Position numbers and translations under genes: made by a program
Assembly (NCBI RefSeq): GCF_000150275.1
Contig: NW_002060945.1
Coordinates: forward strand, 1,244,199 to 1,308,198
Direction of reading: 5' to 3'
Origin: Trichoplax adhaerens
Lineage: Eukaryota > Animalia > Placozoa
Length of the DNA: 64,000 nt
Notes under the pieces: model-generated
Database searches by the model: none
Seen by the model: only the letters and a program-made list of their open reading frames with translations
What the model was told of the DNA's origin: nothing
Shown: piece by piece, positions 1 to 58,940 of the stretch
How positions within the stretch are numbered: the stretch's first letter is position 1
Layout: each line of letters opens with the position of its first letter

Positions 1-3000
1 AGAAATTGAGCAATTTTTCAGTGATTAGCTTGAATTTTATTGACTGTAATAAGAATATCAAAATAACAATTGTTTACATTTTATAAATATAATTTTCTAT
101 TTTGTAATCTAGATTACATAATTTTCTATTTTGTGATCTAGATTATATAATTTTCTTAAATTTTTCAGATACAGTATATCATACTTTCACTTTTGTTATT
201 TTCCAAAATTTTTGGCAATTGCTGTAATAGTGAGTATAAAATGGATAAGATTTCAAATTCGCCGTTTCTATCAAGCCAACACTGTTCCGGGTATAAGACC
301 ACAGCGAGATCGTATGTATTACATATTTGTTATCTAGTAACGAAAGAATAGTACCTTGCTCTTCTTGACAATTTCTGCCATTCCTTCTATTATTTTTCTC
401 ACAATCTAGAATTTAGATAAATAAAAGAAAATTTGTGCACTATACTTTCCCAAGTAACTCTCTAAGCTATTATTGATAACATTAGTATTAGAAAATTTGT
501 AAAGAATAGCTTCTTATTTATTAATCATCAATAATTAATGGTAAGCTATACTGCCATAAGTGAGAATTATACCGCGCGGTCTTCACTTTTCATCAGTGTA
601 TCGTGTAAATATTGTATGATGTATTGATTTATTACTAATTGTTCCATCTATAGAATAAAAGATATCCTTTCGTTAGGGCGAATCTTTGATGTAGAAGTTC
701 AATATAGAGTATCAATAAATTTGATACATAATTTTGAAAATGATACCTGCTCAGTAGTTGCTAATCTTGCTATATCAGTCAGAGCTCTTATTGTCAGTAC
801 GGTTGGCAAGTCCGAAATCTAGAAAAATATTAAAGAATTATCATCTTGCAGTTGCAAGCACATAGATTATGAAAAAATTGATGGAGTAAATGTGTAAGTC
901 TGTACTACGGTATTTATAGTATAGACAAACCTTGCGGGTTGCCGTGAAGATAACGGAGAATAGATCGTGATCGATTATACCCTTCATTTAGTTGTAAAGC
1001 GCGATAATTAGACGATAGAGTACAAGTTAATTGTTATGCGCATGATATTGATATACCTGTAATAACATGCTATCCGAACTAGCCAGGCCATATAAAAATT
1101 GTAAAGCACTCTGTCAATTCAAATGCATAAATTCGTATAAAAAATGAGTACAATAATTCTAGTCAGTAAATATTCTTAATATTGTATAAGTTGCTATTTC
1201 TGACATGAAATTCGTTATGAGTATCTAGAAGTGTTATTTTCAGTACAGGAATCACTTTCAGTCCTATTAATATCTGGTAAAAACAAAAACGTAAATTAAT
1301 TTTTTACTACGTAGAAATAATTCGAGTTGCATATTTAAATTTTTAATATACTAATACCTTAACATCATGACGATCATCAAATCCGTGAACTAGCAGCACA
1401 TGTAATATTTCTAGTGCATCTTTCTAGAGTTTAAAAATTTTTCAATTTTCAAAATATTTTGAGCATTATGATCTGATATTTGATAGTAATACCGAATTAA
1501 ACAATTTTTAGTTCTTACACATAAACGCGGTGATTGACTTGCTAAAATCTCGTAAATACGAACGACAGGTATTTTCTTAAGTGCTGCCTATTGCGTGCAA
1601 ATAAAATTGCATATAATCACACAAAAAGATAGCAAAGACTCAATTTAACGTGTTGTTATTTGGCTACATGATCAGTATTAGTCTATATCGAAATCATGAC
1701 ATAGTATACTAAACTTTCAATACAACACATTTTCATTCATTATAAATACTGTAAGTAATAGGATGGATATCTAACCATAACTTCTTCATTGGAATGTTGT
1801 GATAAATTTGCAATGGATGATGATAAAATTTGATTTTTTTCAGTAAGTAGAGAGTGTAAAATCTTCGTAACTTCAATACATATCTATGGATGAAGAAATT
1901 TTATATTACTGTAATTACTAACCCTAAATTAACTGTAACAGATATGATTTGGATGATGCTACCATACATCGATATCGTTTGACTTTAAGAAATCGGACAG
2001 AATTGGAATTAACTATAATCGAATGATATGATAATAAGAAAATTAACTTCTAAACTAAATGTCAATTCAATATCTCAATTCGGGATCCACATACGTTGAT
2101 ACTATTGTCTCGCAATGCGACGTAATATTCTCGATCGTCTATATGTACCCCAGGAATGAAAGTTAAGGGTTTGTTCATACACTGTTTTATGGTACGAGCT
2201 ACACATTGAAGAAATTGCACCTACAATTGATTTATAACAGGAACTGTAATAATTTATAAGTATATTATTACATCTATATAGTGAATGATTGCTATATTTT
2301 ACCGATTTACCATTATGGATAACAGAAATTGATTTATGGATTATTTCGTAACGTAAGAACAATATCTCGACTAAAAATAAAGATCATACGCAAAAATTTT
2401 TACTTACACCGTAATTTTCTTTTCTTAAATATTATATACAATATCATAGAGCCATACATACTTGCATACTCTGCGATAATTTGTAGCGACTTTAGCGCTA
2501 AGCCTTCGTACGGTGAAGAGATTAATTCAATTAAGAGGGATATATCAGCTATTAGAATGACATCAAATATGGTATGAAATTAGGATTTCTTAAATTTCTA
2601 CTGATTGCATTTCTTAAAGCACCAAAAATAATAGTATTACCGATTGATAACGTATTTGGTGTAGGAAGTATTCCTTTCAGTCTCGTAAGTGAGAGTATCA
2701 TTTTAAGCGATTCTAGTCGTATTTCATAGCTACATAGAAATTGTTATCAATCACGATTTTCTTACATTAATATAACATTGCAGAGTATAATATTATAACC
2801 ATTTTATTTCAAGTAATCGATTTTTGAACTTACTCATCATGATAACGTAAATTCTTAAAAGTATTAAAGATGAATTCATCACTATGAAGGGAATTTTTAA
2901 GCGGTCTTAGAATATAAGCATAATAACCTATGATGATAGAGATACATACTTTCAACTGCACAACTTACTAGTCCGCTTGAGAAATTGTCTCTGTTTCATG

Positions 3001-4930
3001 TGTTCTGTTTAATCCATAGTTGATGGGCATCATGATTACATTAGAAATAGTAGAGTTATGTTTGTAGTTGATTTAGTTTTACGGTAAAATTTTAAATTAT
3101 CGGTAGTTTAATTTCGTTATTAATATCATTTATAAGTCTGGCATTCTTACGTATGTAGCATTTAAATCATATTGATATTCATTGTAATACTTTGAATACA
3201 GCATAGTAGTATCAAACTATGACAACTTTTATTAATCAAGCTTACGATATTTCGTATTCTTTTTGAACTGTACGATTATTTACAAAGTTAAGTAGAGTAA
3301 TCGGTAATGAATTAATTGAGATGATAATAGCAATAGGTATTTAGCTTGTTCTTAGTAAATACTGTACATTATTAGGCCAACATGATGAAATAATATTGTT
3401 AAGTAATAAATTATTTAGATATATTACCGTGGACTGGAAGATAGCGAGATAGGTTGTAGAATCTACCAGAATATGAAATATAATAACCATAGTAAGTAGA
3501 ACTCGGCTGAAAGCATTCGTGAATACATATAAATATTGACTATGCTGTGAGATAGAAAATGATAATAAATTAGAGTCAGTTTACCTTGTCTGCATTCGAC
3601 GTTAGTTCGTATAAATTTTTAATCTTTTCATAAAGACAAATTGATTTATGGGTTGTTAAACGATACGGTTATTTTATACAAGAAATGAAATAGATACTAC
3701 TAGAATGAGCAGTTAATATACTAATTAATTAGCAGAGATAGATTATTTTTATAGGTAACTATATGATCATATATCGACAGCATTACAATTTAGGTCTCGT
3801 GTTGCACTGATCGAACTACATATTATTTACTGTACATGAGGAGCAGCAGTGCTAGTAAGTAGAAGAACAGTTTACTCCATCACGTATGCAAAATCGTAAA
3901 GGAAGAGTATACGAGGGCTTTAGTTTCTGTAGAATAATTGATGAACTTATATACTTTCTGGTCTATATAGCCATATTTGCAACTTGCAACACAGAATCTA
4001 TTTACAAGTGATTTAGATGGAGGCTGTAAATTACTATAAATATAGAAAAATAGCAAAACGAAGAGTTCAGTCTCTACTCACTAATGATTAGATTGATAGA
4101 CGTGTACGTAAATAAATGTTGATCAACTTTCTACTTACTGATTTTGTATAGTGGAGATACAAACTAGGCAAGTATGATAGATACATGTATGCGATGCAGT
4201 TACTTAGTCTAATATTAATTCCAGGAGTGTAGTTTACTATTTATACTTTCCAGTTTCATAGGCAAGGAGTTATCGTTTTTCCTTGCCTATCTACTGTCCA
4301 TTGACCCTGATTGGGATTAGATTGAACGTAACCAATGAAGCTTTGTAAATCAGTTATTGTTTTATCTAATATACTTAAAGAAGATGGTAATCTTTAATGC
4401 CTTATTTTCCGATTTTATATACTACATTCATATGGTACATCTAATAGTCGGATCGTATTCTCCTATTATACCGATAAAGAAGTGAATTAAAGCTAAGTAA
4501 TCATTTTCATTATGTTTGTTGTGATGTATAGAAGACAAGAAATGAGAAAAAGGTAATCAATGTTGAAGTTATTGTAGTAAAAAATATGAAATAACGTAGG
4601 AAGACCGCCATTGCTTACTCGGCTAAATAATCTTCAATATTAAAGGGTAGCAAACAGTGCAATGATAATGTGATCGATTTTATCGCTTTCTGCGTATGAT
4701 GAAAATTTCAAAATCAGCATGAAATACTATAATCGAGTATCATAGCTATCATTATAAGTATAGGCTGATAATTTTAGAAAGAGGTCTATTTATATTAATA
4801 AACACGGAGATCAGAAACATCAAAGTCGTATATCCAAATTAAACAGGTAATCTCTATGATTCGTACTAACGGCTAGCAAGGAATCGTTGACGTAGTAGAC
4901 ATCTTCCTTTTTCAAATCATCAACCGCCAT
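1..4930 (-). CDS. Divergent importin-alpha-like ARM-repeat protein, paralog A (3' end at or beyond the window edge)
   Basis: About 20 small exons. Probable start exon 4871-4930 MAVDDLKKEDVYYVNDSLLA; 3585-3623 IKNLYELTSNADK; 2462-2548 DISLLIELISSPYEGLALKSLQIIAEYA; LIPILSDFLKSNDID|ICIEVTKILHSLL; IPVVRIYEILASQSPRLC|KDALEILHVLL; GIIDHDLFSVIF; RALTDIARLATTEQ. Segments are colinear with importin-alpha ARM repeats. 5' exons between 3623 and 4871 are uncertain. Confidence 0.75.
90..156. repeat. 29-bp tandem repeat, ~2.3 copies
   Basis: aattttctattttgt(a/g)atctagatta(c/t)at repeated. Confidence 0.8.
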
Positions 4931-5269
4931 AACTATTTATTGCTCTTCCATAATTATTTACTATATCTATGAAACAATTTCAGGTGTATTCTGGCTTCTT
5001 AGCAAAGTTTCTCCACTATTTGCGCTTACTACTGGGTGCTATAAGTAGATTGGGAAAGACGAAGTTTCGATAGCTTGCTTATACTGTTGTACTTAAAACT
5101 ATTATATTGCATTGTCATATACATGGTGATAGTAGTTGGAGCAAGCGCATTTAAGATGAACTTTTAAATATGTAATTAATTAATTAATTATATATGTATG
5201 TATGAGTCTCGCTGTCGTAGATTTACTATAGCTATGGTCTTTATTTGTTTATGTTTGCAATAAAGTATA

Positions 5270-5830
5270 TATTGACTATTATTATCCGTATATGCAGTAG
5301 AGCATGATCTATAGAACTGTAAAATGGCAAAGTACCGTATAGTATTTTCGGCTTGGGCATTTACAAAATCATTGATTATCTAAACGATCCGTATCTATAT
5401 AGCCTATTGTTACAGCTAATATGAGAAAGTAAATAATACCGAAATTATCCGGATAGCAAAGATATTAAATGCCAATTCGTATGTTAATCAATATTGTCTA
5501 ATGTCCATGTATGCAGTAGTGCATATTATGTAGTAGTAAAATGACGAAGTACAGGACAGTGTTTTGCATTTTTTAATGATCAAATTATTATAATTATTTA
5601 TTGTCTAGTGATCCATATTATGTATACAGCATATACATTGACTATGTAAGTATAGGTGCATGTTCTATAGTAGTAAAATGGCAGAGCATAATACAATATT
5701 TTCCTCGAACATTGTGCAAAATGATCGATTATCTGATGATCCATATCTTTTACATATTGACCATAGAGGCATAAATGCATGTTAGTGCTAAAACGATACA
5801 GTACAAGAGATCAGTCATTTTGCAAAATGC
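5270..5830. repeat. Degenerate tandem repeat, ~4 copies of variable length
   Basis: Recurrent attgact...gcat...gtaaaatg(g/a)c...caaaatg core near 5270, 5491, 5635 and 5754. Confidence 0.6.
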
Positions 5831-7155
5831 CTAAATCATTTAGGCACCCAATATAGTTTCTAGATGTAAATTAATTTATTTGGAAATATTTAATAAATAA
5901 TGCAAATATTCTTCCGGTTAAAACCTTTTAGATGTCGAAAAATGCTCTGAGTAGCCCAGCCGTTATTCGCCATATCTTTCTTCCTCCTAATTATCCCACT
6001 TTTACAATTTATACGATCACGGAATTATACTGATACTTTTATGGGTAAATACTAATTACCAAATTTTGCATTAAATTTGCAATTAATGGTGGAATTTAAA
6101 TATGTACAAATTACAAAAATTTCAGCATATAATTAATGCATAATTACGACAAAGTCATTAATTTTATAAAGAATCACTAGCTGTTTTTCATCTAATAAGG
6201 TAATTTTAAAAACTACAGATAGTAAATAACGCCCTAGCTGGACACATTTTACAAATAGTTTAACATCGTATTAGTTGATAGCGTATGTACTCATGATGCT
6301 GGATTATCTATTGAATGGTCAGACTCCTATAATAGTTCCCTTATTATATCAGCACAGCAGTATATTAATCATAATCGAAATCATTGCTACTGTATCCATT
6401 TTATGGTCTGTCATATACATAATGTACTGTAGTAGTGTGCGGCATCAATAGACAAGCATTTGCCACTAGAAGTTATCGAAAATTAATGATCTTGGAGGAA
6501 TAATTCGAAACTGCCACAAGAATTATCATGATGTTAGTACTTAGCTTAAAAGTAAAGTTATATACTATAAATCGTAAATTAATAGATCTACTTCATTCTA
6601 ACGAAAGTGATTATTAATTGTAAGATTTTGGTAGTAATCTTGTATATTTATATTGTTTTTGCTATTTCACAGTAGCTCAATTATAATAAATTACGGGCTA
6701 ATTGTCACAATTTCGCAAGATATATGATAAAACATTTTTGAAATTTATTATTGCTATGGTCTCATAATTCAATATGAAAATAATAGAGAGCAACTTTCAT
6801 AAAATAAATTGTGATGGAATAAAGTTAAAACCTCTGATTAAGCTTATTTTACAACTAATGCACTACCATATCACATACGGGTACAGTGCAGATGTTATAT
6901 TACAGTACAAGTTAATAAAAATCTGATTCGAAGTAGATTTTAAAATCAAAACTTATGATAAAATTAGTTTGAATACTTTGGATATATACATGTATAATAG
7001 AGTAATAAATTTGATAAGTATCATTAATGTCCCTTAAAATATTATAACAGTTTTCAAAGTTGACAAATTTTAAAATTTCTAGCCTACTTCCACATTTTTA
7101 GGTAGCTATCAGTGATACAGTAGGTACATTATTATTGCAGTAAATATTAATTTTT

Positions 7156-10100
7156 TTACTTTTTCTTACTTTTAAGATTCAATAAACGAACAAGTTGGTT
7201 TGCTGGTTGTAATACCGTTGAATGTTGAGAAAATTCAATACGTATCATTTCGAGTTTGGGTAGTACTAAAATAATAATATAAGCTTATTTATATTTTATA
7301 ATTCAATATTTAACGTACACGTACGTATATAACTGCTAATGCACCCTTCCGTGTTTACTCATTTCGTTATAGATATAGTCATAATCAATTAGAAAAATTT
7401 ACCTTTAGCTTTATTATTTTCGAATAATTCTGGTGATTGCTGTCATCACGATTATAAGAAGAGAAAAATATAAATATTTCTTATTTTCAAAAGTTAATTC
7501 CATAGGGTATACCGTGACAAAACATTCAAGCAGTATCGTATTTATTAATACTTTCGCTTTCCTAACGCAATTTTCTATAACTTTACGATACCTTGCTTTT
7601 TTTGACAAGATCTGCTATTCCTTGTATCGTTGGTCCTAAAATCTATAAAGTTTAATGATTACTATATTTTTATAGTCACTTGTTAGCCGATGCCATACAC
7701 AATTTTTGATACTGTAGTATTGATGTGGAAATTTTGTTCGGGAAGTTTCTTCAATACTACAATTATAATGGACTGAAAAGCTGCGCTATCATAATATCAA
7801 TCATGAATCGTACCTCATATTCTTCGTTTGTCATCAGTGTTTCAAATAAATGCTGTATTACGTAGTGATTTTCAGCTATTTGTTTAATCTGCAAAAGAAA
7901 AGCGATTATTCCCTTAAAATAAATTCTTTATACATGCATTGTGTAAGTAGAGTAAAATAAAAATTTTAGCATAATACCTGTGATGCAGTTGCTGATCTAG
8001 CCGCACAAGCAATCGTCCTTGTTATAAGAATATTGCGGTATTTTGAAATCTGCAATATCAAATATCTATCGTCACAAAGTGTGTAGACCACATAAATATT
8101 AAAAGATGACTGTGTAATATTGATGTACAAACCCTAGGCATTCCACGAAGGAGAACTGAGAACACATCATGATCGATTACACCCTTCATTTGTATATAAT
8201 CATTATATTTAATTAATCTGTTTATTGAAAGATAAGCTGATCAAAGCATACGTCATACGGTGCATACCTGCAATAATCTACTATTCACGCGGATTACATT
8301 AATCAGAAGTTTTAAAGTATTCTGTTAAATATAATTTCACATCAAAATATGTACTGTAAAGGGCAAATAATAATAGTAGCAACATGCCACATATATATTT
8401 TTATTTAGTATTTCTTTGGGTACCGTAATAACATCGAACTCGCAGGTGTTGTTTAGAAGGATTGCTTTCAGTACAGGGATCAGTTTTAACCCTATCAGTA
8501 TCTAATTAATACCAAAAAATGAAATTTTTTCATTATTTAATTTGCTACTTTGGATAATTTTACAACATTAATTGGTAACTGGTGCCTAGAGGTATTTCTC
8601 AGTACATGGGTTAGTTTCAATCCACTATTACCTAATTAAAACAGGAAATTAAATATTAATCATTCAATTTATTGTAAAATAAAACGAACTGAGCCTAATT
8701 TACTCTCCATAAATTTTGAAGCACGGTACCTTTACTTCTTGGTGGTCCTTACGCTGCGACATTAGTACATCTAAAAATCCTAATCCAGCAATCTAAATTT
8801 TATTAAGATGTATATAATTATTTCATATCTTTTCAGATAAAATATTGATCAAATAGCAATAACTGAGAAAATTTTAAAATAAACTTTAAATTGCTACAGA
8901 TCTTTGGAAAAAAGATTTACAAATATTTAGTATCTCTACAGATCAAATATCTAGTAGTACAGTAGTAACGAAAAAAACTTTAAAAACGGACTCAAATTTC
9001 TTACACGTAAATGCGGCGATTGACTTGCTACAATTTCAAATATGCAGATAATAGGCGTTGTGTTAAACGCTTCCTATAAATCATAAAAAAGGAAGGCAAA
9101 TTTTCAATTTCAAGATACTTCACTTTCCTTAAGCAATGAGTATTACTTAATCTTGTGATAGATTGACAGAGAAAGTCAATCTTTCGTATAATATATTATT
9201 TACTTAATCTAAATCTTTAAGTAATATTATGTGTGCCTCACCATAACTTTTCCATCTGAATATCGCGATGCGTTGTCTATTATAGATGATGATAAAATAT
9301 CTCCTTTTTCAATAAATAGCAATCGTAAAACTTGTATAATTTCTCTATAAATCTGTTAGAAGGAAACAAATATAAATGTTATCCTTGTAAATAAGCAATG
9401 AAAGTTTCTTTTACTATACTTATGAGTAAAATATATATATACATAAATACCTTGATATCGTTTGACTGTAAGAGAGTGGATATTATACTAGTCAGCTGTA
9501 ATTGAATGATTCACATCGGTATTAAGGAATGTCGGACAAGTAAAACTTTTATATAATATCTTCATTTATATAGCAGTGTATTGCCGTACGTCAATAATAT
9601 TATCTCGCAATGCAAGACAGTATTCTTGATAATCCACAGAGAAATGATAGTGCAAGCACTTATTTAAGGTATAAATTAAACCCTTAAGAAATAATACCTA
9701 AAGAATGTAAAAGATTTTCAGCGTCATATTAATAACTAAAGTACATGTTTAATGTATACCGTATTATAGGTAATTGCTTAACTTACCGATTTGCCGCTAT
9801 ACATAGCGGAAAGTAGTTTGGGGATAATCCCATAGTTTAGAAATAATATGTCGTCTAAAAATTAGAAATTGCATGACAGCGGTCTATAAATACCGATGCA
9901 TATGTGTATGTCTTGTACTACTTAAGTGTAGAATGTCATAAATGATTTACTTACTTGCATAAGCCGCAATAACCTTCAAAGATTTTAATGCCAGTTCTTC
10001 GATAGGTGATAATATTAGTTTAAACAATAGGGATATATCCGCTAGAGAATGACATACATAACGAATACCTTAAATATCTCAAATTTTTAGCTTAATTTTC

Positions 10101-11475
10101 TGCTAATACGTGTGTTTTGAGCATGGAAACACAAATACTTAAAGAGTATTAACTTGCCCATTGATATGGTCCTTGGATTAGTAGAAATTCCCTTTATATG
10201 GAGAATAATTTCGATCGTTTTAAGCAATACCATTCGTTGCTCATAGCTACAATGAACATAGCCATTAATGTTCAACTATAAATATGTAATTTAGGCTCGA
10301 CATAATGAATAATTAACTTACTCATCATGATGATGTAAATTGCTAAATATTTCAATAATAAGTCTGTCGCTGCAAAGGAAAATATTTAAAAGGTATAAGA
10401 ATTAAACTAAAGCAAAATGGGTCATTAAATTTAGCATGCGTATTTCATTTCGTAAAAGTTTTAATGTCAACAAAATATCCCACCAATTAGCTTGAGAAAT
10501 TGTCTTTCCTCCAGATATTCTTTGTTAAATTGACAAAACAATAAACGTATAAGTAGGATTATGTCGAGTAGTCAATTTTTAGGTTATATAATGATTCTAT
10601 TAATACCTAAAGTGCATATGAATTACCACAACTATAACTATCATATTTATCTGTCCCTTGCAACATTTTAATTCATTCGATAGCATAAATGCTCTTTCCT
10701 GATAATCATATAATTACACATTATGAATGTTGAATTCAATATACCGTAGTAATAAAGTACGATAACTTTAATGGAAAATAATCATTGTCATTCATACAGG
10801 TTATTCGTGCACTTATTGCTAGATCTGTGACAGCTTACTAAAATATTATGAAAATATAACTACCTTACATCAATGTAAGCGTAACCTAAGTCTAGCCACT
10901 AATTATTTTAGCTGATTCTCACTGATTTATGATGTACGATTATATTGATAAGTAAGATATCATGTACGGTGCTCATCAACTTACATATCATTTAAAGAAT
11001 GAACCTGGCTGGAGGGCAGTAACATGGACTGTAGGATCTACGATAATGTATGCAAATAAAATTAATAAGATTAGGCTCCTGTAATGGTCGCTTAAAGCCG
11101 CAAATAAATCGTATTGCATTTGAGTATCATACTTTACCTTAACTATTTTCGATATTGGATTATCTAAGTCATCCATCTATGATACAAAGAAGTGCATTAA
11201 CTAGCAATAAATTGGATGAATTTTGTCGATGAACTCAAAAATAGATGAATGCATCATATAATATTTGAAATAATAATCAGTTCAAGACTGTCAGAGATAA
11301 TGATGCTACACTTAATGAATGGGGTTAAAGTACCGCTGGTAAATGTTAATTTTTAATAGTAATTGGAACAGGAAAGTAGGCGATTACCATTACTTATCGC
11401 CTTGACGTCGATTATGGATAGTAATTTGATCATCAGGAATATCTTTGTTAAGGCCTGGCTCAATGATTAGGCCCT
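7156..11475 (-). CDS. Divergent importin-alpha-like ARM-repeat protein, paralog B (start not resolved)
   Basis: Exon-for-exon match to A: 11138-11176 MDDLDNPISKIVK; 9955-10041 DISLLFKLILSPIEELALKSLKVIAAYA; NYGIIPKLLSAMYSGKS; LTSIISTLLQSNDIK; 8424-8501 ILIGLKLIPVLKAILL; GVIDHDVFSVLL; ILGPTIQGIADLVKKSK; likely last exon VLPKLEMIRIEFSQHSTVLQPANQLVRLLNLKSKKK* with stop at 7156-7158. Confidence 0.75.
8560..8660 (-). pseudogene. Decayed tandem duplicate of paralog B exon 8424-8501
   Basis: GTAATAGTGGATTGAAACTAACCCATGTACTGAGA aligns with ATACTGATAGGGTTAAAACTGATCCCTGTACTGAAA 130 bp away, with the same taattag acceptor, but is 1 nt short and out of frame. Confidence 0.65.
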
Positions 11476-11729: not shown

Positions 11730-12284
11730 TGTTACGGTGTTATCTTACCGTTAGGATAGTTTAATATGTACAGTAGTAGTAGTAGCTAGTATGGAAGATA
11801 TTCATATTTGTAGTGCTAGGTAAGGTAAGTAATGCCTTAATAAGGATATTATTTGTGGTTGTTTATTACATATTAGATATTGATTGCTATTATGTGTAGA
11901 TAGTAGTAAGATGAATCAAGTTCTAGCTATTGATAGTTGAATTAGATAACATACATGCTTAGATTAAGATTAAGTATGAGTAAGAGATTTAAAATATTTA
12001 CTGATAGAAAAGCGATGTTTCGAATATCTCAGCTCGAGATGCCTCTCCGAGAAAGGTATAATAAAAATACTGTTGTTGTCTACAAATTACCGGTTTCTAT
12101 ATAAATGGGAACGTTTGAGTTGAGTTGGATGGTGAAAAGTTGTAAATATGTCTATGCTAATAAAAGTTCTATCTTTACGGTACTACGCTGAGTCTGTTCA
12201 ACGTTTAGTAAAGAACGTTTAAGTCAGTAGTTACTTAAAGACTTTTACTGTACGTTTCCTTGTCGCAGAGTTGAAATTGTGACA
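11730..12284 (+). mobile_element. Solo LTR, copy 1 (~555 bp)
   Basis: TGTTAC...GTGACA termini, TATATAAA at ~12098 and AATAAA at ~12159, flanks AATTT/GATTT (4 of 5 match), full-length similarity to 50383-50932. Confidence 0.8.
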
Positions 12285-16350: not shown

Positions 16351-16404
16351 AAGCCTAGACATATCCGTGCGGACATGCAATAGAGTGTCTATATAACATA
16401 ACAT

Positions 16405-28262: not shown

Positions 28263-28606
28263 ATGAAATGGATCTCTTTGGTAGCTTTATGGATTTGGAC
28301 TACGATAACTCCAGGTAGCGTAATCTACCATTATTTATGCAAAACTCTTGAATATTTTTACGTTAAAAATACAAAATCATCTAATATATTGCTATAATAA
28401 TTATAACGCTTAACTCCTACACAAGAATGAACACTGAAATAATCTCATTAGCATGAAAAAATTAGCTTACGTATTCTTTCTTAATTAGGTAATGCGGAAA
28501 ATTGTCCCCAATACTGTTTGTGCTTGCAAGGTCTTATTTCATGTCAAGATGCTCGAACAAGCACGGTTCCAGTCAGCAATGTGACACGTCCAGATGTATT
28601 AGTTCT
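28263..28606 (+). CDS. LGR exons 1-2: signal peptide and LRRNT cysteine cap
   Basis: ATG at 28263, hydrophobic stretch, phase-1 donor G|gtagcg matching acceptor ttag|GT at 28489; CPxxCxC...C motif. Confidence 0.8.
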
Positions 28607-46721: not shown

Positions 46722-49700
46722 TTAATAAAAATTCAAGTAATATTGGTACATGTTTGCAAATCTACTGCTGATATAGATGTTCATACTGCTTTCAGGGAGA
46801 TGAAAGGATTTCATATCTATCGTTTCGGTGAAAGTCTTGAAAGATGAGTGTAAATATCTAATTAGGTCTTATTTATATAGCGATGCTCAGTCGATACTCA
46901 AAATGCATAGTTAAGACCCAAAGTAAGAGAATGACACTTAGTCAGTTAAAACTTTAAACTATAAATATCGTAAGGCTAACCTAAGTTCCTTCATGCAAGG
47001 TAAGTCGTCATGGTCTTTAAAGATTGCATCTAACTTCTGCGTCTGTAATAATGGTCAGAAGAGCAAGTTTAATCCTAAAACTGATAGTTGCAAAATTAGC
47101 TTAAAATACTGTATTTCGAGACGGACCTGTTCCTTGGTACCACTATAAATTGCATTACGGGAAATATCTGTAAGACTCCAGCTTAACGACGGCATCTAAA
47201 AACAGATTTCGCAGATATGATGTCATTACCGTTTTATGCAGTGATAGATTTGCTATTTCAATATCTTACTTGTTTTACGCAATTTATGACATCAAGTACA
47301 ACATCTTCATCTATTATTTTCTGAAGTAGATTAAAAAAGTCAAGAAATTATTTTATTGGCAAATTTAATCGAAATAAACATTATCAATTGACATACTTTC
47401 CTTACCTGCAATAGGATCCGATCAGTAAGGATTAGATTAGTCAATATTAGTAAAATACTCTATATAATCGATGATAGTATGGAGAGGTTTGCTTAGAAAT
47501 TCGATAATTTCATATAACATTGAATCACCATTATTATATCGTTTCTATATGAAGTAGGTATAATACCGTAACATACCTCTAAATTTGTTATACTCAATTT
47601 CTTATAATTTTGTATCATTCCTTTCATAGAAGGTATTAACTTAATACCAATCGTTAACTATTAGATTAGAGACAAAGAATTTCACATATTTAATAAATCA
47701 TCAAATGTATTGGTGAAAGAAATCTAGTAATATCATATAAATAAACGTCTATACCACTGAGTGAGAGTGTTCTACCATAACAAGGCGATTTAGCAGTTGC
47801 AATGCCGGTTCCTTTAATACGATAATCAGAAAGAAAAAAGAAATTTTTATATGACTGAAAATCTACTGCAGCCAAGTAAAAGTAAACGGTATATGATTTA
47901 ATATCTTATTAAGCAACATACATATAAGCGAGGCGACCCACTTGTAAACACTTCAAAGATACGAGGTAGCGTTATATGATTATGCAATCGCTATAAATCA
48001 CGTAAGATGTAGAATCAGTACGATTATTCATAAGCGCTTTGTGCACTATTGCTAAGTTTGCTTCTATCAATTTAATCTGTGATTAGCGTATACACAAACC
48101 GCTCCATACCGCAAAAATAGGTTCATGTCGAAGCGCAAGCAAATTAATTAAAGTTTTAATTGTGTATTGTAGGACCTGCATAGTTCAATTAAGTTATTTC
48201 ATTAGTTAATAAATATGAGGTGTAAAATAGCTTAATATAAAAAGACATCAAAGAATATCTAGTCTTACGTATTTAATAGTAAGCATATGGCATAATTTAC
48301 AAACGTATCAGTACCTGTACATCATCAGATTGTATTAGTATGCCAGTAATATGGAGCAACTAAACGCGAATGAAGTAAGAATCTATAATCAGTATAAAGA
48401 TATAATCTAATTTTTAACAAACAAGAAAGTTATGATTAGCTAGCTATCATATTGGTAGTTTTCTGACATTATAGCTGAAGGCTTCCCAAGTGAAATATCG
48501 CGAGGTAGCCAAGATGTATGTGACGGAGGCAGTCATCTGCAAAAATTCTATCTGCGTAGGGCAATTAAGAATTGATATTAATACTTTTCGTATACAGTAC
48601 TTCAGGCTACCAGCATGATGTAAAGTACTAATTAACCTCATAATATCATTTATCTTAATACCTACCGATTTATTTAAATGGACAGCCTTGATTAAATTTT
48701 GGATCATCGCACTTTGAAAATTAATTTCGCTAACTGAGTATAAAATAAGGAAAAGAGTATGAAATATTTCCTAATCTATATTTGTATACTGTCTGAATAG
48801 GGTTGCACGATGCCATTGCAAATCAAAATAACGCATTAGTTACCATTACTAGCAATCGCTTCTAAAATTTTTAAGCAATTTATAGTAAGATTTTCATGCG
48901 GAGAAACCAACATCGGAAGTATTAGAGATATTCTTTCTGTTAATTTTTTCGAATAATGTTATTCATCAAAGCCTCAATTGAGTTAAGAAAAAGTTCTGAT
49001 GAATAAAAGTAATTGTAAACCTAGTTCTATGATAGGAACGGCTTCATTAGCATTTGGTATTTTTATAGGATAGAAGTATCGAAAGAGTACCGCCAGAGAT
49101 GTTGATATTTCCATTAGCACCTCATAGCTATATGTGTAAAAATATCACAATATATAGTTTAGTAATTAACGGAATAGCTGAGTACAGAACTGAAAGCGTT
49201 TGACTGCTGCTTTTTTTGTTATATCCTCAGTATATGTAAATTGTTTGCTAACTGATCATAGAGTTCAACCAGTTCAAGTAGGCAAGATAATAATCTAGAT
49301 CTGTCCAAAATATTTAGGCCATTATTAGTATCAAAGTGATACAGTGCATTTACTCAATATTAATTGATAGTTTGTTTCAACTCTTGGCTATTACTTTTTT
49401 CTTATTAGGGCTTTGTCTTCATCTGATGTCCTGCAACATGAGAAGTTATCGATATTATAAGATTTTTGTATTTAAACACTAATGAAAAATTAAATTTTAC
49501 AAGGAAAGATTGAATAAAACATTTGCAGTCACTAACTTTATGGACGGAGCTGACAGATGATGATCTCTTTCGATGTCATTCAAGTTGGATTTATTTATGT
49601 ACTGCAGTATTAATTGCCTAAATATAAATTTAATAACTTATAAAGCTAGTAAATCAGGAATAATATAGTATTATTGATCATTACTGTACGATACAGGTTA

Positions 49701-50382: not shown

Positions 50383-50932
50383 TGTTACGGTGTTACCTTA
50401 TTGTTAGAATAGTATAATAGTGCAGTATAGTAGTAGCTAATATGGAAAATATCCATATTTGTAGTGCTAGGTAAGATAAGTAATGCCTTAACGTGGATAT
50501 TATTTGTGATAGTTTATTATATATTTGATATTGATTATTATTACGTGTAGATAGCAGTAAGATGATTCAAGTTCTAGCTAATGATAGTTGAATTAGACAA
50601 CATAAATACTTAGATTAAATATAAGTAAGAGATTTAAATATTTACTGATAGAAAAGCCAAGTAAGGAACATTTCAGTTCGAGATGTCTCTACTAGTAAGG
50701 TATAATATTAATACTGCTGCTGCTGTTTGCAAATTAGACGGTTCCTATATAAATGGGAACATTTGAGTAGCGTTGGGTGGTGAAAAGTTGTAGATGTGTC
50801 TATGCTTATAAAAGTTCTATTTTTACGGTACTTTGCTTTATGTGTTTAACGTTTAGTAAAAGAGCCTTTAAGTCAGTAGTCACTTTAGACTTTTACTGTT
50901 TGTTTCCTTGTCGTAGAGTTTAATTTGTGACA
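50383..50932 (+). mobile_element. Solo LTR, copy 2 (550 bp) with perfect 5-bp target-site duplication
   Basis: TG...CA ends, ATATA directly on both sides, roughly 85% identical by eye to copy 1; no internal domain follows. Confidence 0.88.
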
Positions 50933-51272
50933 ATATATGAATCAGCTAATCGGTTACATAAAGGAGATGTACATTAGAATATCTATACCAATTATAACAA
51001 GTCTAAATCAGGATACGCCTGCATTAATTAAGTACACACTCTATGGACCATCATCAGTCTCGTGGCTAGTTTAAAGTATATCCAACTCCATCTCTGCCCA
51101 TAACATACAGTAACCTCAACACCTCCATTAGATTCAATAATCATAAAACACTTCATCTACCAATATTAATGAAATAACTTTTGCCTTTGTCATATTCATT
51201 TACTATATAATCATTTTTAGCATACACAGGATATTTTAACGTTCAAGTGCTACTCCAGTAATGGATCAATTG

Positions 51273-51735
51273 GCTAACAACAAAGCGACATTATCGAATT
51301 GACTGCCTCGATTGATCTAATATTAGTCAATATTTAAGCTGAGCTTCTACTGCTAAATCATCTAGATCTCCTGACTAAATTACTGCTAACGACAAAGCGG
51401 CATTATCGAATTGACTGCCTTGATTGAGCTAATATTAGTCAATATTTGAGCCGAGCTTCTACCGCCAATCATCTAGATCTCTAAGACCGCTAAATCATCC
51501 AGATCTCCTGACTAAAATACTGCTAACAACAAAGCAACATCATCGAATTGGCTGCCTCGATTGATCTAATATTAGTTAATATTTGAGCCGAGTTTCTACC
51601 GCTAAATCATCTAGATTTCCTGACTAAAATACTGCTAACGACAAAGCGATATTATCGAATTGACTGCCTCGATTGAGCTAATATTAGTCAATATTAGCGC
51701 TGAGCTTCTATCGCTAAATCGTCCAGATCTCCTGT
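51273..51735. repeat. 112-bp tandem repeat, 4 high-identity copies
   Basis: gctaac.acaaagc.acattatcgaattgactgcctcgattga.ctaatattagtcaatatt...agatctcctg at ~51273, 51385, 51522 and 51634; unit 2 carries a ~25-bp internal duplication. Confidence 0.9.
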
Positions 51736-53967
51736 CTATAATGCCGATGGAAGTCTGCTCATCCATCCTTCATTCTACAGTACATCATAAACTTTATCAA
51801 TATGCATTACCATAATCTTGCAGAATAGACTTTCATTTACTGCTGGTGATGGAAACTAGGTCCAGGAATGCCCGTATTAATGGAGTTTTTCTACCAAACG
51901 TTAACCTGATCATTTACTTTGGCCGGAATGAATTGGAATGGAGGATTGATTTTGTATCACTCACCATGGTGATGTAACTCGGTAAAGTCTTCTATAGTAT
52001 ATCATGGGTTGTATACCTGTACAAGGAAGAGTATAGTCGACAGAGTCTAGCATAGTACTGTATACTATAATGTATAGTACTCTCTTAACACCTCTAATAT
52101 GAAAATAATATGCAATACTGTCGCTATCTACTGTATGATGTAAGAGTCATATTCATAGAGATCAAAGATAGAACAGGAGAGCTTGGTCTTTTTAAACTTA
52201 AGGTAATTTTCCGACTGTACTCTTGCTCTAGCTCGAGAAATGGACTCCTAGAAGTCCATGGCCAGGTAGTGATAGATGGGGCTGGAGGCAAATATCTTAT
52301 GATATCTTTCTTGTCATTGCTGTTGACAACAGCTAACTAATTTAATGTGGTAGAGACTAGTTGGAAGAGAGAGTAATGGAGTAGTCCCTGACGCCTGCAA
52401 TCATACTTATAGTATAATAATAGAGCTGGGAATTATAGGTGATAATAGCTCTATCTAACCGTAAGTTACTCCGATTCGAGATACTATAAAATGGCTGAGG
52501 TTGCTTTGCACGAGATGATGTTAAGGCTATCAGTAGCAGAATAGTTACTGTACTGTAGCCTAGCAATTTTTGAGATTCTTAGGTATTTCTGCTCAGATAG
52601 CTTGTGATACTGACAGCAAGTCAGATAGATTAGATCGAGTGGGGTCTTTCCTTTTATCCGAGGTAGTAAACATCAGCCTGATAACATTTCAGTTTAGGGG
52701 ATGACAAATTACCAATCAACGATTGTGGTTGATGTCTTGTACAAGATGATGGAATCAGTAGCAAGACTTAGGTGCAGTATTTCTGCAATGGTAGCCACAG
52801 TAGCTTAGCTTGCGGTACTGTCATTGATTTAAAATATCAAATTTATAACTTTTCGGTTTAGGGTATTACAAATTACAAATTAAGGCGCCTAATAAGAACC
52901 ATTTTAACGGTGTAAATAAGTGAATATGGGCAATCAGTCCATATTTTAAGACTATCTTGTGCCAATAACGAGGTTAGGAACAGCACTGGTAATCTATCTT
53001 CATATAGTCTACACATTATTAAGACTTGTAAATCACTGAGAATCTATAGGGAAAAAGGTTGCCAGGAATTTCAGATTTTAGTGCTCTTATTTTATAATTC
53101 TACGAACTTCACGGACTGTTTAATGTTGGAGGATATTATACGATCTCTTGCGCTAAAATACAAATAGATGAGGCAATTCATTTATCTTTCCTTCGATATG
53201 CATAAAATACAGCAAATTATATGCGGTAATCAGCATTCTGAAATAGGCTGTAATGGAAGAGCTAGATTTATTTTAGACTCTATTCTTAAAATGATTATCT
53301 CATGAATAATTGATTATCATTCTTGATTTAGGATCACCGTTATTTGAATAAATTTTACATTTCATATAAATATAATACAAATTGCATGTTAAAATATATG
53401 AGAAGAAAACGCCAGGCACAAATATACACGTATGTATTTTCTATCTAGAGTATCAAGTTTTATAATCACTACGCAAATAAAGATAAGTTAGATGTTGCAA
53501 GCAATCCTATGAATCATTCGATTTCTAAGAATACGCATGATGACGTTATTTAATGTCGCGTTAGCATCTATTTAGAAATTGCCTAACAGTAAAATTGCTA
53601 TGGACAAACTCTGCAAAACTTGACTGCAGATACGAAATTATTTTCTAGGGCGTTACGGGATCATAACCATAACTTAGTGGAACCCAAGTGATTGGGGTAT
53701 GTCGATCGAAATTAAGGCTATGTCATAAATGTCATAAGTGGTTTAACCGAGGCGACCTAAATAAATGAATCCTCACGGATAATTCGAAATAGTTTAATAC
53801 ATCGAAAGAAATCGATTATCAAGCGTATTCTAAAAGTAGCTTTTCGCTACGCTGGTATATCATAATTAAGGAAAATATCACCTTGAAGCCATCCACACCC
53901 CTTAAAAAAATTTTCTCATATCTTTCGAAAAAATAACCTTAATTGACATCTTGGTATAAATTCAATG

Positions 53968-56900
53968 TTATTTGAACTTTTGTATGAAACTGTACAGCTC
54001 TTCCGCTAACGCAGATACTTCCGGTTGCCCATTTGTATGAATAATCCGTAACTGTGCTAGAGCTATATATAAGCACAAAATAAGCGGTATTCATTATTTT
54101 AACTTTTAAATTACTTCTTGATACTTCATATAAAATAATTTTTCTTGTATCTTACCAATAGCAATTCGTCTACTAATATCTGTTCTATACTACATTCGGT
54201 TAGCATTTATCCATTGTATACTTACCATCATTCTTCATTTCTTTCGATAGATTCGGTAGCCACTAAAATTATAATATATATTAGTATACATGATTTCATG
54301 TTTTTAATATATTTCAGATATACTATCAATAGACTTCTACCAACACAAAACTATTAATATCAGATTTCGTATTAAGAAAGTAACCATACCTTACACTTTG
54401 ATACCACAGAATGTAAACCAAAGAAGGATGGCATCATATTCTATTACGTAGTAATAACAAATATTTACAAATTAATGTGGGTCTTTAAATCCTAATTACA
54501 CTTAAAAACAAGCAATAACGTATATAACAGAAATGAGTAATCTAACCTTATATTTATTTTGATCAATTAATGATGCAAACAGGTAAATAATCATTCGGTC
54601 ATGCTTTTGGACAAGATCACGTACCTATTACAGTTTAAAATAATAATAATTACGGAATAATTATAGATTTTGCTTAGTAGATACAATTTCAGTAAATGTT
54701 TTATCGAACCTGATCATCACTTGCAAAATTGATCATATCTGCGAATATACTTGTTATCATTTTCCTATCCAAGCCAGGTGACTGTCAACGAGATTATAAT
54801 TACTAATGTCATATAATGATACTCTCTTATTGAATTGGCAGTAAATTATCCTGCTTAATTAAACTATTTTTACCATTTCTGAACATTTAAATATTGTAGA
54901 GACCACATCTTCATCGATCATTTTCTATTTAATGGAAAAAGGAACCGCAAAGTTAATGTGTCACATTCAGATTTCTGAGCTTTAATGATTGATATTTTGC
55001 ATTGGTATTACGTTAATTTCGTTACCTGTACTAGTTCGTATCCATGATAAATTAATCGATTGATAATGGTTAATATCTCCTATAAATTACATTAGTTAAT
55101 TTCCAATAAAAATATATGTATCGCTGTAACAGTATTATTAGTATCAAAACGATATGTTAATAGTTTTGTTGTATTTACTAACCGAAAGATCAGAAGTACT
55201 ATGAATACACTTTTTACGTAATAGATTATGAAGATAGGACAGCACTTTGCTATCTAGCAGAAACTGGTAAAGGGAAATAACAATTAGTTTTGAATAGATA
55301 TCATATTGACAGAGCTATTATAGCATATGAAGTATGAAGATTATTAATTTGTATGAAGTCAAATTCGTTAATTACTTTATTTTCATTGTGAGAAACCTTT
55401 TCAATCGCGAAGTACAACAACTCAACGATAGGATTCTGTCAAGAAAAACGAATACAAGTCTAAAGCAATCGTAGTTTCTAACTCATTGAATATTGCCTAT
55501 TCTACCGATAAATTTACGTTAATTTGTTCACAATTTTCAAGTACCTGCAAATATAATGACTGGCTAGCTACAATTTCGCATGCATAACCAGTAGGAATTA
55601 AATCCATATTTAATTGCCAAAGCTATTAATTTTTAATTTATTAGAATGGTTACTCCGATAAAATAAGTTGATGGACAGCATTTATTTGTGATAGCTGACA
55701 CTTAAACAGTTGCTTTTACAAGAATAAACATCACATAGAATTATGTAATACTTTAAAAAGATAAAATAGCTAACCTCATCATCAGTTTCATCTCTTATAT
55801 ACGAAAAAATTGTATGCCTATTGATTATGATGACAGTCCATGCCTTTAAAATTTCTTTTAATACCTATAATATCGTATATTGAAAAGCTATGGTATAAAA
55901 AGAGAAACATAGTACAATCTTTGCTAATTAATTGCACCGGGTTAAAGTATAAATTAATACTTTGACTGTATTGCTTACTCTTTATATGAATTTCATTTCA
56001 CTACATGTACGTACCTTGACATCATCCGATTTAATTAGCAGAACGACGATTTGCAGCAGCTACAAAAAAGTCGTGAATGATATACCATTTACTTTAGCAG
56101 TAAACACAACGTATAGCAATATTATTTGCAGATATCGTTCATATACCGGAATGATATGAGGAGATTGATATAAATATTTCATGCAAGCATATACTAATGA
56201 CGCTGTTGATCGAAGGAATTGAGTCTAGCGGTGTAAAAAATAATACAAGCTAAAATTAGCAATCGCATGCAAGCTATCATCATAGTACGGTGTAACAGTG
56301 CATTACTTACGGATCTACCCTTTGCGATTACATCGGCAATTTTTTGAACATCATCAACTCTAGTGATTAATATTTCCTCTATAATTTTTAATAAATTGTA
56401 CATCATTAAAATTAATTTATGGCTATGCAACGCTTACTCTTTATTAACTTGAAACCATACCCGCACAATGGATGAGTAGCTGCATCGATTTAATGGCAAG
56501 ATCTTCATATGGAGAAGCTAATAAATTAATCAATACTGGGATACAATCTATTTACATTTAAGTAAAGGATAAAATCAAAATTTTAGATTGACCTGCAGTA
56601 AAGTTACAATCAAGAATAAGTACTTCATTTTTTAAACATTGATAATTTTCACACGAAATCATAACCTGAAGCTATAGGAAAGGAATAAAAATTTGAATCA
56701 CGACTACAAACTGATTCCAATAGTAGCATGATATCCATATCTAGATCGAAACTGCAAGACAAGTTTTAGTTGTAGCGTCAACAAACGTGGATGCTGTTTA
56801 ATTATGAGCTATAATGCAGTATACCTATCGCTTTTTTCTATTAACTGGAATAGTTTTGAAACCAATTCACTTCTATGTCAATGATGATAGACAAATTAAG

Positions 56901-58940
56901 TTGGTAAATTTATTGTTAGACTTGGTTCTGATAAAGTTTTAAATCAGTGACAAGATAGGTGTATGCATATTTTATTGCTTTTACCTAGAACGGTTAAAGA
57001 TAGTACAATCTTGAATATAACCAAACACGTCACCTCTGCAATTTAATTTAATTTAATTCTTTATATTATAATAAGGCTTCCAACGGCTATTTTTGTAAAA
57101 AAACATTAATGTAATGATTGTCTATGTTATAAATTCAAGTTATTTTATAGAAGTAGAATGAGTCAATATAATTTATATCGCTTAATAATTCTCAAGGAAA
57201 ATCTTAGATTCGTGGCTATCAATGATGAAAAAAGAAGTCGATTAAAATATCTGACCTTCCGGCAGCCCAATAGCGATGAGATACTATTCTGGGCAGTAAA
57301 AGTCTAAAATTTCAAGAGCGTCTAGTTATTAATACATGTAAATAAAATTCAATTAAGGTTGATAATAGTATACGTATAGTATAAGCTAACAAAAATAAAC
57401 ACTGATGTTTGCGTTTACTTTAAATGATGTATTGCATTTCGAGTATCATTACAACGTGGACCATGTCGGACATTCTTCTTACAGGGTAAAGACATACATA
57501 TAAAGATATAAAAATAGTAACGATTAGTGTATATAGGTACTGTAGAATTGATATATAAAAAGTTGTATTTAAATATCAAGATACCTCGACTGCGAGTGAA
57601 AAATGATCCAATAAAGCATCAATCTAAAAGTTTAAGATTGAAAAAATTTTGACTATTAAGTTAAATTAGTTAAACCTCATATTGTTATACATCAACGATA
57701 TTTTTCTATAGTAAACACCCAGAAAAATTGTAAGGCTACCAGAATTTGTCTTACAAAGTGTCTTATAATGAACTCAAAATTACAATAGCATGGCTTAGTG
57801 TTTCGTTTTGCGAACATATTTTTATTGGTATGACTAATACCAAAGTTTAGTTACTCCTAATCTTAAATTGTTTTACGCCAATTGAAATGCTTAATTCTAC
57901 TATAACACGCATATAGTCGTGCAGATTGTATTTTGATACACAACCTTTGCTAGATCTTCATCTTCACTGTCATTAGAATCCTATAAAGGAGTATTAAAAA
58001 TTGATTGATGAGAATAGTTAACACTGGTAATATTATTAACATTATGTCAATGATGGAAAAATATTAGTAGTTTGTAATCACCTGCTTTAAACAATTTGTT
58101 ATTGTGATATCAAATATTGTGCATGCAAGTTACCATTTTGTGCCTTTTAGTATTACCGTTGTGTTAGTGGTTATAGTTAACCGACATAACTAGTGAAAGT
58201 AAAGAATTTCATCTAGTACGGTGTTTGTTAATTAAACAAGAAAACCCTAAAGCTTTCGATACTTGTATGTTGCTAATCTACTCAATGTTGTCCCAGGTAG
58301 TATTTGAATGACATTTAAAAGACACACATCATCGATTAGCTAGCTTTCAAAGTTCTGATCTATTCGACAAATGAATGTCATCATTTGGATATTGCATGTG
58401 AAATCATACTCATTGAAGGAATTGTTTTCTATAAGCGTATTTACCTAGGGATCTAGACAATCCTATAGCTTATGATTGAGGTAATTAATCAACATAAAGA
58501 CAAGATTGTCATCTGCTATGGAACATGTTTAGCCGGTCATTTTCGTGATTGAAATGGAAAAATCCTCCAGCGTTAGCAACTACAAAGGATTACTATTGCT
58601 CTTTAATCGCAACAATTATAGATTCCATTAAACCATTAATAACGGTGGAAATTGTGAGAAAAAAATCTAGTAATTATTCAAATTGTATACTCTTATTCTA
58701 CTATGTATAGAATTTGCACACCAAAAAATATTGATCAGACGATTGACGTATACAAACATGACTAAGACAAGGTATTACAAAATGATTACTGCTGTCTTAT
58801 CCCTATTTTCGTTAGATTCATCTATCTATAGCGCAAAACTGCTACTTCATATCCATCCAATACGCCTATTTCAATCACGATTGATTCCTTCTTACCTCAG
58901 TTATCGAATCGTCCTCTTCTAAATCACTGAAACTAGCCAT
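53968..58940 (-). CDS. Divergent importin-alpha-like ARM-repeat protein, paralog D (apparently complete)
   Basis: Start exon 58896-58940 MASFSDLEEDDSITE; DSNDSEDEDLAK; 57585-57623 IDALLDHFSLAVE; 56461-56547 CIPVLINLLASPYEDLAIKSMQLLIHCA; LLQIVVLLIKSDDVK|VLKEILKAW; FLLDSKVLSYLHNLL; KMIDEDVVSTIF; last exon LAQLRIIHTNGQPEVSALAEELYSFIQKFK* with stop at 53968-53970. Confidence 0.8.

What the first reader, a model, noticed from the sequence alone, without database searches (positions are those of the whole stretch)
1..58940. Four-gene tandem family of importin-alpha-like proteins that have lost the NLS-binding groove
Seen: four minus-strand genes with matching exon phases and lengths (a 39-nt exon in all four; an 87/87/93/87-nt exon) whose segments follow importin-alpha ARM order. 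Known: importin-alpha binds NLS cargo through conserved WxxxN motifs and is usually highly conserved. Here the site equivalent to QAVWALGNIAG reads KSLQIIAEYA, KSLKVIAAYA, NCLKILEAIA and KSMQLLIHCA. The site equivalent to RNAVWALSNL reads QCVARTIKQC, KGLIYTLNKC, QMTASVTYIL and RSTASLVYAC. Frames and splice sites look intact despite strong divergence. Inference: a lineage-specific, fast-evolving family repurposing the scaffold as decoys, novel adaptors or conflict genes.
Basis: partly seen in the sequence, partly recalled or inferred. Interest (0 to 1): 0.8.

Follow-up and report, generated by a model that had tools for sequence, protein, structure and literature searches.

The report
Importin-alpha-derived family lacking NLS groove
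Four neighbouring Trichoplax genes, part of a family of at least ten, descend from the nuclear-import adaptor importin-alpha and keep its exon layout, but they have lost the parts that bind importin-beta and classical nuclear localisation signals, so they probably do something new.

Summary
The window is Trichoplax adhaerens (C1412:1244199-1308198). Four minus-strand loci (A 185-3033, B 7156-10519, C 47127-49617, D 53968-56872) share one 18-exon architecture: an 87-nt exon 3, a 68-nt exon 4, then a run of phase-0 exons.

An evidence-based Trichoplax sp. H2 gene model reproduces the exon chain of A.

Importin-alpha descent is strongly supported. At least 11 of the family's 17 introns coincide in position and phase with introns of the host's canonical importin-alpha genes. 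A less-derived paralog on another contig still carries importin-alpha helix-3 signatures. Profile searches hit only importin-alphas among natural solved proteins.

The proteins start at ARM2, with no IBB or ARM1. They have replaced the Trp/Asn pairs of the major NLS site in all four genes.

dN/dS is 0.24-0.45, and about twice as high on the former cargo-binding helices as on the scaffold helices.

Corrections:
- The family has at least ten members, not four.
- The "39-nt exon in all four" was not reproduced.
- Exon 3 is 87 nt in all four.
- Locus C lacks a traceable 3' end, and B lacks the conserved start codon.
- The assembly gap lies in an unrelated plus-strand LRR-GPCR gene.

Function is untested.

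The parts
185..3033 (-). Locus A (TRIADDRAFT_54148), exons e0-e16; the terminal exon e17 lies just before window position 1
   Evidence: Exons (hi-lo): 3033-2969, 2881-2834, 2729-2641, 2548-2462, 2370-2303, 2220-2095, 2012-1968, 1883-1776, 1587-1519, 1423-1358, 1273-1205, 1110-1057, 981-931, 818-747, 647-573, 405-355, 221-185. They match the H2 model P0005 at 98.7% amino-acid identity.
7156..10519 (-). Locus B, exons e1-e17 plus an e0-like block without ATG
   Evidence: Exons: 10369-10322, 10246-10131 or -10110, 10041-9955, 9854-9787, 9697-9590, 9495-9451, 9352-9242, 9073-9005, 8792-8730, 8501-8433, 8321-8268, 8183-8133, 8049-7978, 7888-7814, 7642-7592, 7439-7403, 7265-7156. It is 47% identical to A.
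47127..49617 (-). Locus C, exons e1-e13 only; the 3' part was not found
   Evidence: Exons: 49617-49555 (weak), 49127-49021, 48936-48850, 48733-48666, 48599-48468 (5' boundary uncertain), 48359-48315, 48175-48110, 47990-47922, 47811-47755, 47657-47577, 47459-47406, 47320-47270, 47195-47127.
53968..56872 (-). Locus D, exons e1-e17; start exon unresolved
   Evidence: Exons: 56872-56825, 56751-56666, 56547-56461, 56378-56311, 56224-56108, 56059-56021, 55864-55775, 55622-55545, 55435-55376, 55263-55183, 55079-55026, 54924-54874, 54781-54710, 54624-54547, 54440-54390, 54262-54226, 54062-53968.
2462..2548 (-). Exon 3 of A (ARM3; 87 nt). Equivalents: B 9955-10041, C 48850-48936, D 56461-56547
   Evidence: This is the most conserved exon of the family (44.9% mean pairwise identity). 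The canonical Trp is replaced by Q, K, K and Q in A, B, C and D, and the paired Asn is also replaced.
2095..2220 (-). Exon 5 of A (ARM4 helix 3). Equivalents: B 9590-9697, C 48468-48599, D 56108-56224
   Evidence: The canonical Trp is replaced by R, Y, S and S, and the Asn by Q, K, I and A.
63919..64000 (+). Possible first coding exon of a fifth paralog (E) that continues beyond the window end
   Evidence: Chain finder on the window end plus L014: exon 1 at 63919-63966 (weak, z 2.9); exon 3 at window-equivalent 65117-65203 (z 6.0).

Best explanation
**Shown.** A-D are tandem, DNA-duplicated descendants of an intron-rich importin-alpha gene. They belong to a Trichoplax family of at least ten members. 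They encode roughly 430-residue all-helical ARM superhelices corresponding to ARM2-ARM10.
- They lack the importin-beta-binding (IBB) domain and ARM1.
- They have replaced the Trp/Asn pairs that hold classical NLS peptides.
- They are under purifying selection overall, with about twofold faster protein change on the helix-3 exons (the cargo-binding face of importin-alpha) than on the helix-1/2 scaffold exons.
- One ARM3 motif is conserved family-wide.

**Inferred.** They no longer act as classical NLS receptors coupled to importin-beta. They serve instead as importin-beta-independent binding modules whose concave face has diversified towards non-classical ligands, acting as adaptors, chaperones or decoys. 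C, and possibly B, may be decaying copies.
For: **Exon architecture.** It is shared by A-D and by paralogs E-I and is validated by the H2 model P0005.

**Shared introns.** Canonical gene L024 has exons of 87, 45, 63, 69, 57, 72 and 54 nt, all phase 0. Paralog H has 84, 45, 63, 69, 57, 72 and 54 nt. Canonical gene L023 adds the 51, 72 and 69 nt exons. Canonical gene L022 shares three junctions.

**Bridge paralog H.** It keeps the importin-alpha ARM5-8 helix-3 signatures. It matches canonical exons collinearly at E 8.9e-6, 7.7e-5 and 0.01. Its exon 13 alone hits only importin-alphas among natural PDB proteins.

**Profile and structure.** The profile of P0005+P0006 hits only importin-alpha 7 and 3 among natural PDB proteins (E 0.0045-0.04), aligned ARM5/6-ARM10 in register. 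The AF2 model (pLDDT 72.9) gives importin-alpha and designed ARM proteins as Foldseek top hits (E about 5e-7). The Atlas's ten nearest structural neighbours are all importin-alpha.

**Lost features.** W/N table. No IBB or ARM1.

**Selection.** dN/dS is 0.24 between the H1 and H2 orthologs and 0.35-0.45 between paralogs. It is 0.52-0.67 on helix-3 exons against 0.26-0.36 on scaffold exons.
Against: - There is no direct transcript or protein evidence for A-D in this genome. Only the H2 models are evidence-based, and per-gene support was not seen.
- A-D on their own do not reach significance against canonical importin-alpha exons or Pfam Arm.
- Mean dN/dS below 1 on the helix-3 exons fits relaxed constraint as well as diversification.
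- B lacks the conserved start and C lacks a 3' end.
- The functional reading rests entirely on inference from lost features.
Confidence: 0.8

Rival explanations
1. The four loci are decaying pseudogenes: dead importin-alpha duplicates with no present function.
For: - B has no ATG at the conserved start.
- C has no traceable exons 14-17.
- The reference annotation holds only one partial model, P0001, for the cluster.
- No Pfam domain reaches threshold.
Against: - Seventeen or eighteen exons remain open, with GT-AG sites and preserved phases, in A, B and D despite saturated dS.
- Exons are conserved while introns are not.
- dN/dS is 0.24-0.45.
- A family-specific ARM3 motif is conserved across ten members.
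- Evidence-based H2 models exist for two members (PMC6057997).
Confidence: 0.08
2. They are still NLS receptors that bind basic signals through an atypical groove and enter the nucleus without importin-beta. This has been reported for IBB-less importin-alphas.
For: - IBB-less importin-alphas are reported to be functional in transport in yeast and Drosophila (PMC8645118).
- The overall ARM2-10 superhelix is retained.
- The ARM10 start motif is partly conserved.
Against: - All three major-site Trp/Asn pairs are replaced in A-D, and the minor site is gone in A, B and D.
- The helix-3 exons are the least conserved part of the family. That is the opposite of canonical importin-alpha.
Confidence: 0.08
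3. They belong to a different ARM or HEAT family and resemble importin-alpha only by convergence of the repeat fold.
For: The structural search over cluster representatives ranks axonemal ARM proteins, ARMC8, plakophilin and p120 as high as Kap60. Weak sub-threshold Pfam hits go to ARM_ARMC5 and ARM_LIN_2nd.
Against: - Eleven or more shared intron positions and phases, including six consecutive exons of identical length, link the family to the host's importin-alpha genes.
- Paralog H forms a sequence bridge.
- The profile hits importin-alphas only.
Confidence: 0.02

Closest known systems
Canonical importin-alpha (KPNA/SRP1); in this genome the genes at C1410:~1.25 Mb, C1410:~5.91 Mb and C1411:~0.93 Mb
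   Same: - ARM2-ARM10 are collinear.
- At least 11 intron positions and phases are shared.
- Linker motifs between ARM7, 8 and 9 are retained.
- The predicted superhelix has the same overall shape.
   Different: - No IBB domain and no ARM1.
- The Trp/Asn pairs of the major NLS site are all replaced.
- No Pfam Arm, Arm_3 or IBB hit reaches threshold.
- Only 13-26% identity to the canonical exons.
- At least ten fast-evolving copies, against three conserved genes.
Drosophila IBB-less importin-alpha duplicates (alphaKap4, alphaKap5, alphaKap6 and alphaKap2 copies; PMC8645118)
   Same: They are lineage-specific extra copies of importin-alpha that lack the IBB domain and evolve faster than the parent genes. 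They have been discussed as specialised or conflict-related.
   Different: - The fly copies are mostly retrogenes with zero or one intron. The Trichoplax copies keep 17 introns and arose by DNA-level tandem duplication.
- The Trichoplax copies also lack ARM1 and the NLS Trp/Asn array.
- They are far more numerous and far more divergent.
- Tissue specificity is unknown, and placozoans have no described testis.
Other ARM-repeat scaffolds (axonemal ARM proteins, ARMC8, plakophilin, p120, beta-catenin)
   Different: No evidence of common descent closer than the ARM superfamily. Gene structure and residual motifs point to importin-alpha instead.

Membership tests
Importin-alpha (karyopherin-alpha) | Descent from an importin-alpha gene, shown by shared gene structure and sequence continuity | tested here: met
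   At least 11 of 17 introns are shared in position and phase with the host's canonical genes. Paralog H bridges the sequences. The tree places H beside the canonical clade.
Importin-alpha (karyopherin-alpha) | N-terminal importin-beta-binding (IBB) domain, PF01749 | tested here: not met
   The genome scan finds IBB only at the canonical gene on C1410. There is no IBB hit in P0005 or P0006. No IBB-like ORF lies upstream of any member. Caveat: small split IBB exons could escape detection.
Importin-alpha (karyopherin-alpha) | Ten ARM repeats including ARM1 | tested here: not met
   The H2 models begin about 20 residues before ARM2. Exon 1 aligns to ARM2 helices 1-2 of the canonical protein. No ARM1-like exon lies upstream.
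Importin-alpha (karyopherin-alpha) | Trp/Asn (WxxxN) array on helix 3 of ARM2-4 (major NLS site) and ARM7-8 (minor site) | tested here: not met
   All major-site Trp and Asn are replaced in A-D. The minor site is lost in A, B and D, and C keeps a W...N in ARM8. P0005 has only two Trp, both in the last exon.
Importin-alpha (karyopherin-alpha) | Pfam Arm (PF00514) or Arm_3 (PF16186) above the gathering score | tested here: not met
   None of the 31 genome Arm hits falls in the window. P0005 scores Arm at E 0.28, below the cut-off, and has no Arm_3 hit.
Importin-alpha (karyopherin-alpha) | Binding of NLS cargo, importin-beta and CAS/Nup50 | not testable with these tools
   This needs pull-downs or ITC. 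No complex prediction was run.
IBB-less importin-alpha duplicates of the Drosophila alphaKap4/5/6 type | An importin-alpha duplicate lacking the IBB domain | tested here: met
   compared with PMC8645118.
IBB-less importin-alpha duplicates of the Drosophila alphaKap4/5/6 type | Origin by retroposition (intron-poor) | tested here: not met
   Seventeen introns are retained, and the copies sit in tandem or head-to-head arrangement.
ARM-repeat fold | Right-handed superhelix of three-helix repeats | tested here: met

The most novel reading that the evidence does not exclude
The family could be a diversifying recognition system built on a disarmed import adaptor. Copies of importin-alpha would be freed from transport (no IBB, no NLS ladder), and their former cargo-binding face would evolve quickly to capture lineage-specific ligands. 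One example would be decoys or sensors for proteins of intracellular bacteria or selfish elements that target importin-alpha. Haplotype-level copy turnover would fit this: locus B in H1 and the P0006 gene in H2 occupy the same position but are not alignable.
Probability: 0.12. Interest if true: 0.85.

Novelty: new variant of a known kind. Interest (0 to 1): 0.55.

Why it matters
Importin-alpha is among the most conserved eukaryotic adaptors, and extra copies are usually few and recognisable. Here an early-branching animal carries at least ten copies that databases list only as hypothetical proteins without domains.

These copies keep the ancestral exon layout but have shed the importin-beta handle and the NLS-binding ladder. 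The former binding face is the fastest-changing part.

That gives a natural series, from canonical genes through paralog H to A-D, for studying how a transport receptor scaffold is repurposed. The exon models also improve on the reference annotation of TRIADDRAFT_54148.

The finding is a clear case of neofunctionalisation or relaxed duplication rather than a new kind of system.

Tried and rejected
- **Single-exon Pfam scans** of A, B and H gave nothing.
- **The genome-wide Arm scan** found no hit in the window.
- **The exhaustive HMMER search** could only be run on one 42-residue exon. It returned the locus A model plus three long repetitive proteins, which I did not pursue. It therefore says nothing about distant relatives.
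- **Word-indexed full-length searches** found only Trichoplax proteins.
- **The structural search over cluster representatives** did not discriminate importin-alpha from other ARM proteins.
- **The ten-member family HMM** against ARM-locus ORF fragments was only weakly selective.
- **A-D as single queries** gave no significant hit to canonical exons.
- **The 39-nt exon** was not found as a homologous set.
- **IBB or ARM1 exons upstream** were not found.
- **Expression look-ups** by gene identifier found nothing.
All later work used coordinates only.
- **Joined (spliced) models** of B-I and of the canonical genes were assembled only inside scripts from coordinates, for local alignment, HMM, tree and dN/dS work. 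They were not submitted to the database, family or structure tools.
- **No complex prediction** was run.
Full report
**Scope and constraints.** The window is Trichoplax adhaerens contig C1412:1244199-1308198, from a 105.6-Mb, 1414-contig assembly (organism named). Spliced models cannot be handed to the database tools. Those tools therefore received single exons by reference or database protein ids. Joined models were built only inside scripts from coordinates.

**Observation.**
- A DNA alignment of locus A against locus B shows indel-free blocks of 55-75% identity, each bounded by AG and GT. The stretches between them are full of indels.
- Fifteen exon pairs have identical or in-frame lengths and the same phases.
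- The exhaustive search with exon 5 of A returned TRIADDRAFT_54148 (P0001, 315 aa), a model that skips five of the conserved exons.
- The Trichoplax sp. H2 ortholog TrispH2_002527 (P0005, 432 aa) comes from an evidence-based MAKER annotation (PMC6057997). It reproduces my exon chain exactly and adds the start and last exons.
- A splice-aware, homology-guided chain finder then recovered the same architecture in C and D. Most exons rank first with z of 3-7 and are collinear.
- Exon 3 is 87 nt and exon 4 is 68 nt in all four.

Locus C has no phase-compatible exons 14-17 before the neighbouring gene. Locus B has no ATG where A starts. The last exon of A lies just outside the window.

**The gap.** The gap at 33787-33836 sits in an array of LRR exons of a plus-strand gene that ends in a rhodopsin-type 7TM exon. 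An LRR_8 exon lies at 33498-33596, and 7tm_1 (E 1.2e-23) at 45385-46392 (earlier notes). No family exon is within 10 kb, so continuity across the gap does not bear on this finding.

**Family size.** A profile of P0005 and its neighbour P0006 finds further exon-3-like hits. Three lie on the plus strand just beyond the window end, one on C1410 near 5.03 Mb and one on C1290. The chain finder recovers the same exon architecture at all of them, giving paralogs E-I. Together with the P0006-type gene the family has at least ten members.

**What they are.**
- Pfam gives nothing above threshold.
- P0005 hits designed consensus armadillo proteins at E 2.6e-6.
- The two-member profile hits only importin-alpha 7 and 3 among natural solved proteins (E 0.0045-0.04). 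The alignment runs ARM5/6 to ARM10 in register and includes the linker motifs around ARM8.
- An AF2 model (pLDDT 72.9) is an all-helical repeat. Foldseek's best matches are importin-alphas and designed ARM proteins. The Atlas's ten nearest models are all importin-alpha.

**Decisive evidence.**
- Paralog H still carries importin-alpha helix-3 signatures in ARM5, 6, 7 and 8. It matches exons of the canonical gene on C1410 collinearly, at E 8.9e-6, 7.7e-5 and 0.01. Its 23-residue exon 13 alone hits only importin-alphas among natural PDB proteins.
- I resolved the junctions of that canonical gene and found two further canonical genes.
- The chain finder shows that one of them (L024) has exons of 87, 45, 63, 69, 57, 72 and 54 nt, all phase 0. 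Paralog H has 84, 45, 63, 69, 57, 72 and 54 nt. The other (L023) adds the 51, 72 and 69 nt exons.
- At least 11 of the family's 17 introns are thus inherited from an intron-rich importin-alpha ancestor.
- A tree groups the three canonical genes (100/100). It places H next to them and unites the other nine members (100/99).

**Lost features.**
- The models start about 20 residues before ARM2. No IBB or ARM1 exon is detectable.
- The canonical Trp of ARM2, ARM3 and ARM4 is replaced in A, B, C and D, and so are the paired Asn.
- The ARM7/8 pairs are gone in A, B and D.

**Selection.**
- A differs from its H2 ortholog by 5 non-synonymous and 6 synonymous changes (dN/dS about 0.24).
- Paralog pairs A/B/P0006 give dN/dS of 0.35-0.45. 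C and D are 26-31% identical to the rest, with dS saturated.
- Exon 3 is the best conserved exon (44.9%).
- Helix-3 exons are the least conserved (16-23%), against 27-37% for helix-1/2 exons.
- dN/dS is 0.52-0.67 on helix-3 exons against 0.26-0.36 on scaffold exons. The bootstrap interval of the dN difference excludes zero.

**Mechanism (inferred).** Without IBB there is no coupling to importin-beta and no autoinhibition. Without the Trp/Asn ladder there is no classical NLS binding. A conserved scaffold with a fast-changing concave face suggests binding modules with new, diversified ligands. Relaxed constraint is an alternative that the present data cannot exclude.

**Comparison and novelty.** The nearest described case is the set of IBB-less, faster-evolving importin-alpha duplicates of Drosophila (PMC8645118). 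Those are mostly retrogenes. The Trichoplax copies are intron-rich tandem duplicates that have also lost ARM1 and the NLS ladder. I found no paper on this family.

**Limits.** I have no transcript evidence for A-D and no full-length exhaustive homology search. The 5' ends of B, C and D and the 3' end of C are unresolved.

Noticed in passing
window 28263-46392 (+): A large LRR-GPCR gene lies between loci B and C. It has many about 33-residue LRR exons (LRR_8) and a 335-residue 7tm_1 exon at 45385-46392. The assembly gap at 33787-33836 falls inside its LRR-exon array, so the number of LRR exons there is uncertain.
   Followed up: partly
window 5988-10520 versus L013 (H2 contig NOWV01000018.1): H1 and H2 align at 98.7% over window 1-5988 and then lose all DNA similarity. 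H2 carries TrispH2_002528 (P0006) where H1 carries locus B. The two unplaced H1 contigs C128 and C329 are 98-99% identical to the H2 P0006 gene. This points to divergent haplotypes or an unassembled copy.
   Followed up: partly
window 11764-12378 and 50388-50945: A repeat of about 600 bp with roughly 80% identity, similar in all reading frames and so non-coding, lies 1.3-1.9 kb upstream of both B and C.
   Followed up: no
window 185-3033: The reference annotation TRIADDRAFT_54148 (315 aa) skips exons e1, e2, e6, e10 and e14 and uses another frame for its start and a different 3' end. The H2 model and paralog conservation indicate a protein of about 432 residues.
   Followed up: yes
window 59998-61102; also 51338-51769, 13568-14182, 16392-16833: These are local tandem or dispersed repeats that show up in several reading frames on both strands in the self-comparison. 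They lie between D and E and in other intergenic stretches.
   Followed up: no
L022, L023, L024 (C1410:1248000-1257000, C1410:5911000-5920999, C1411:931000-940999): The three canonical importin-alpha genes differ strongly in intron density. L023 and L024 keep half-repeat phase-0 exons. L022 has fused many of them and has shifted some junctions by 4-7 codons.
   Followed up: partly
one search hits P0002-P0004: The exon-5 query matched three long proteins (1072-1897 aa) in 4-8 stretches each, at E 3e-9 to 1e-4. These are probably repetitive sequences unrelated to the family.
   Followed up: no
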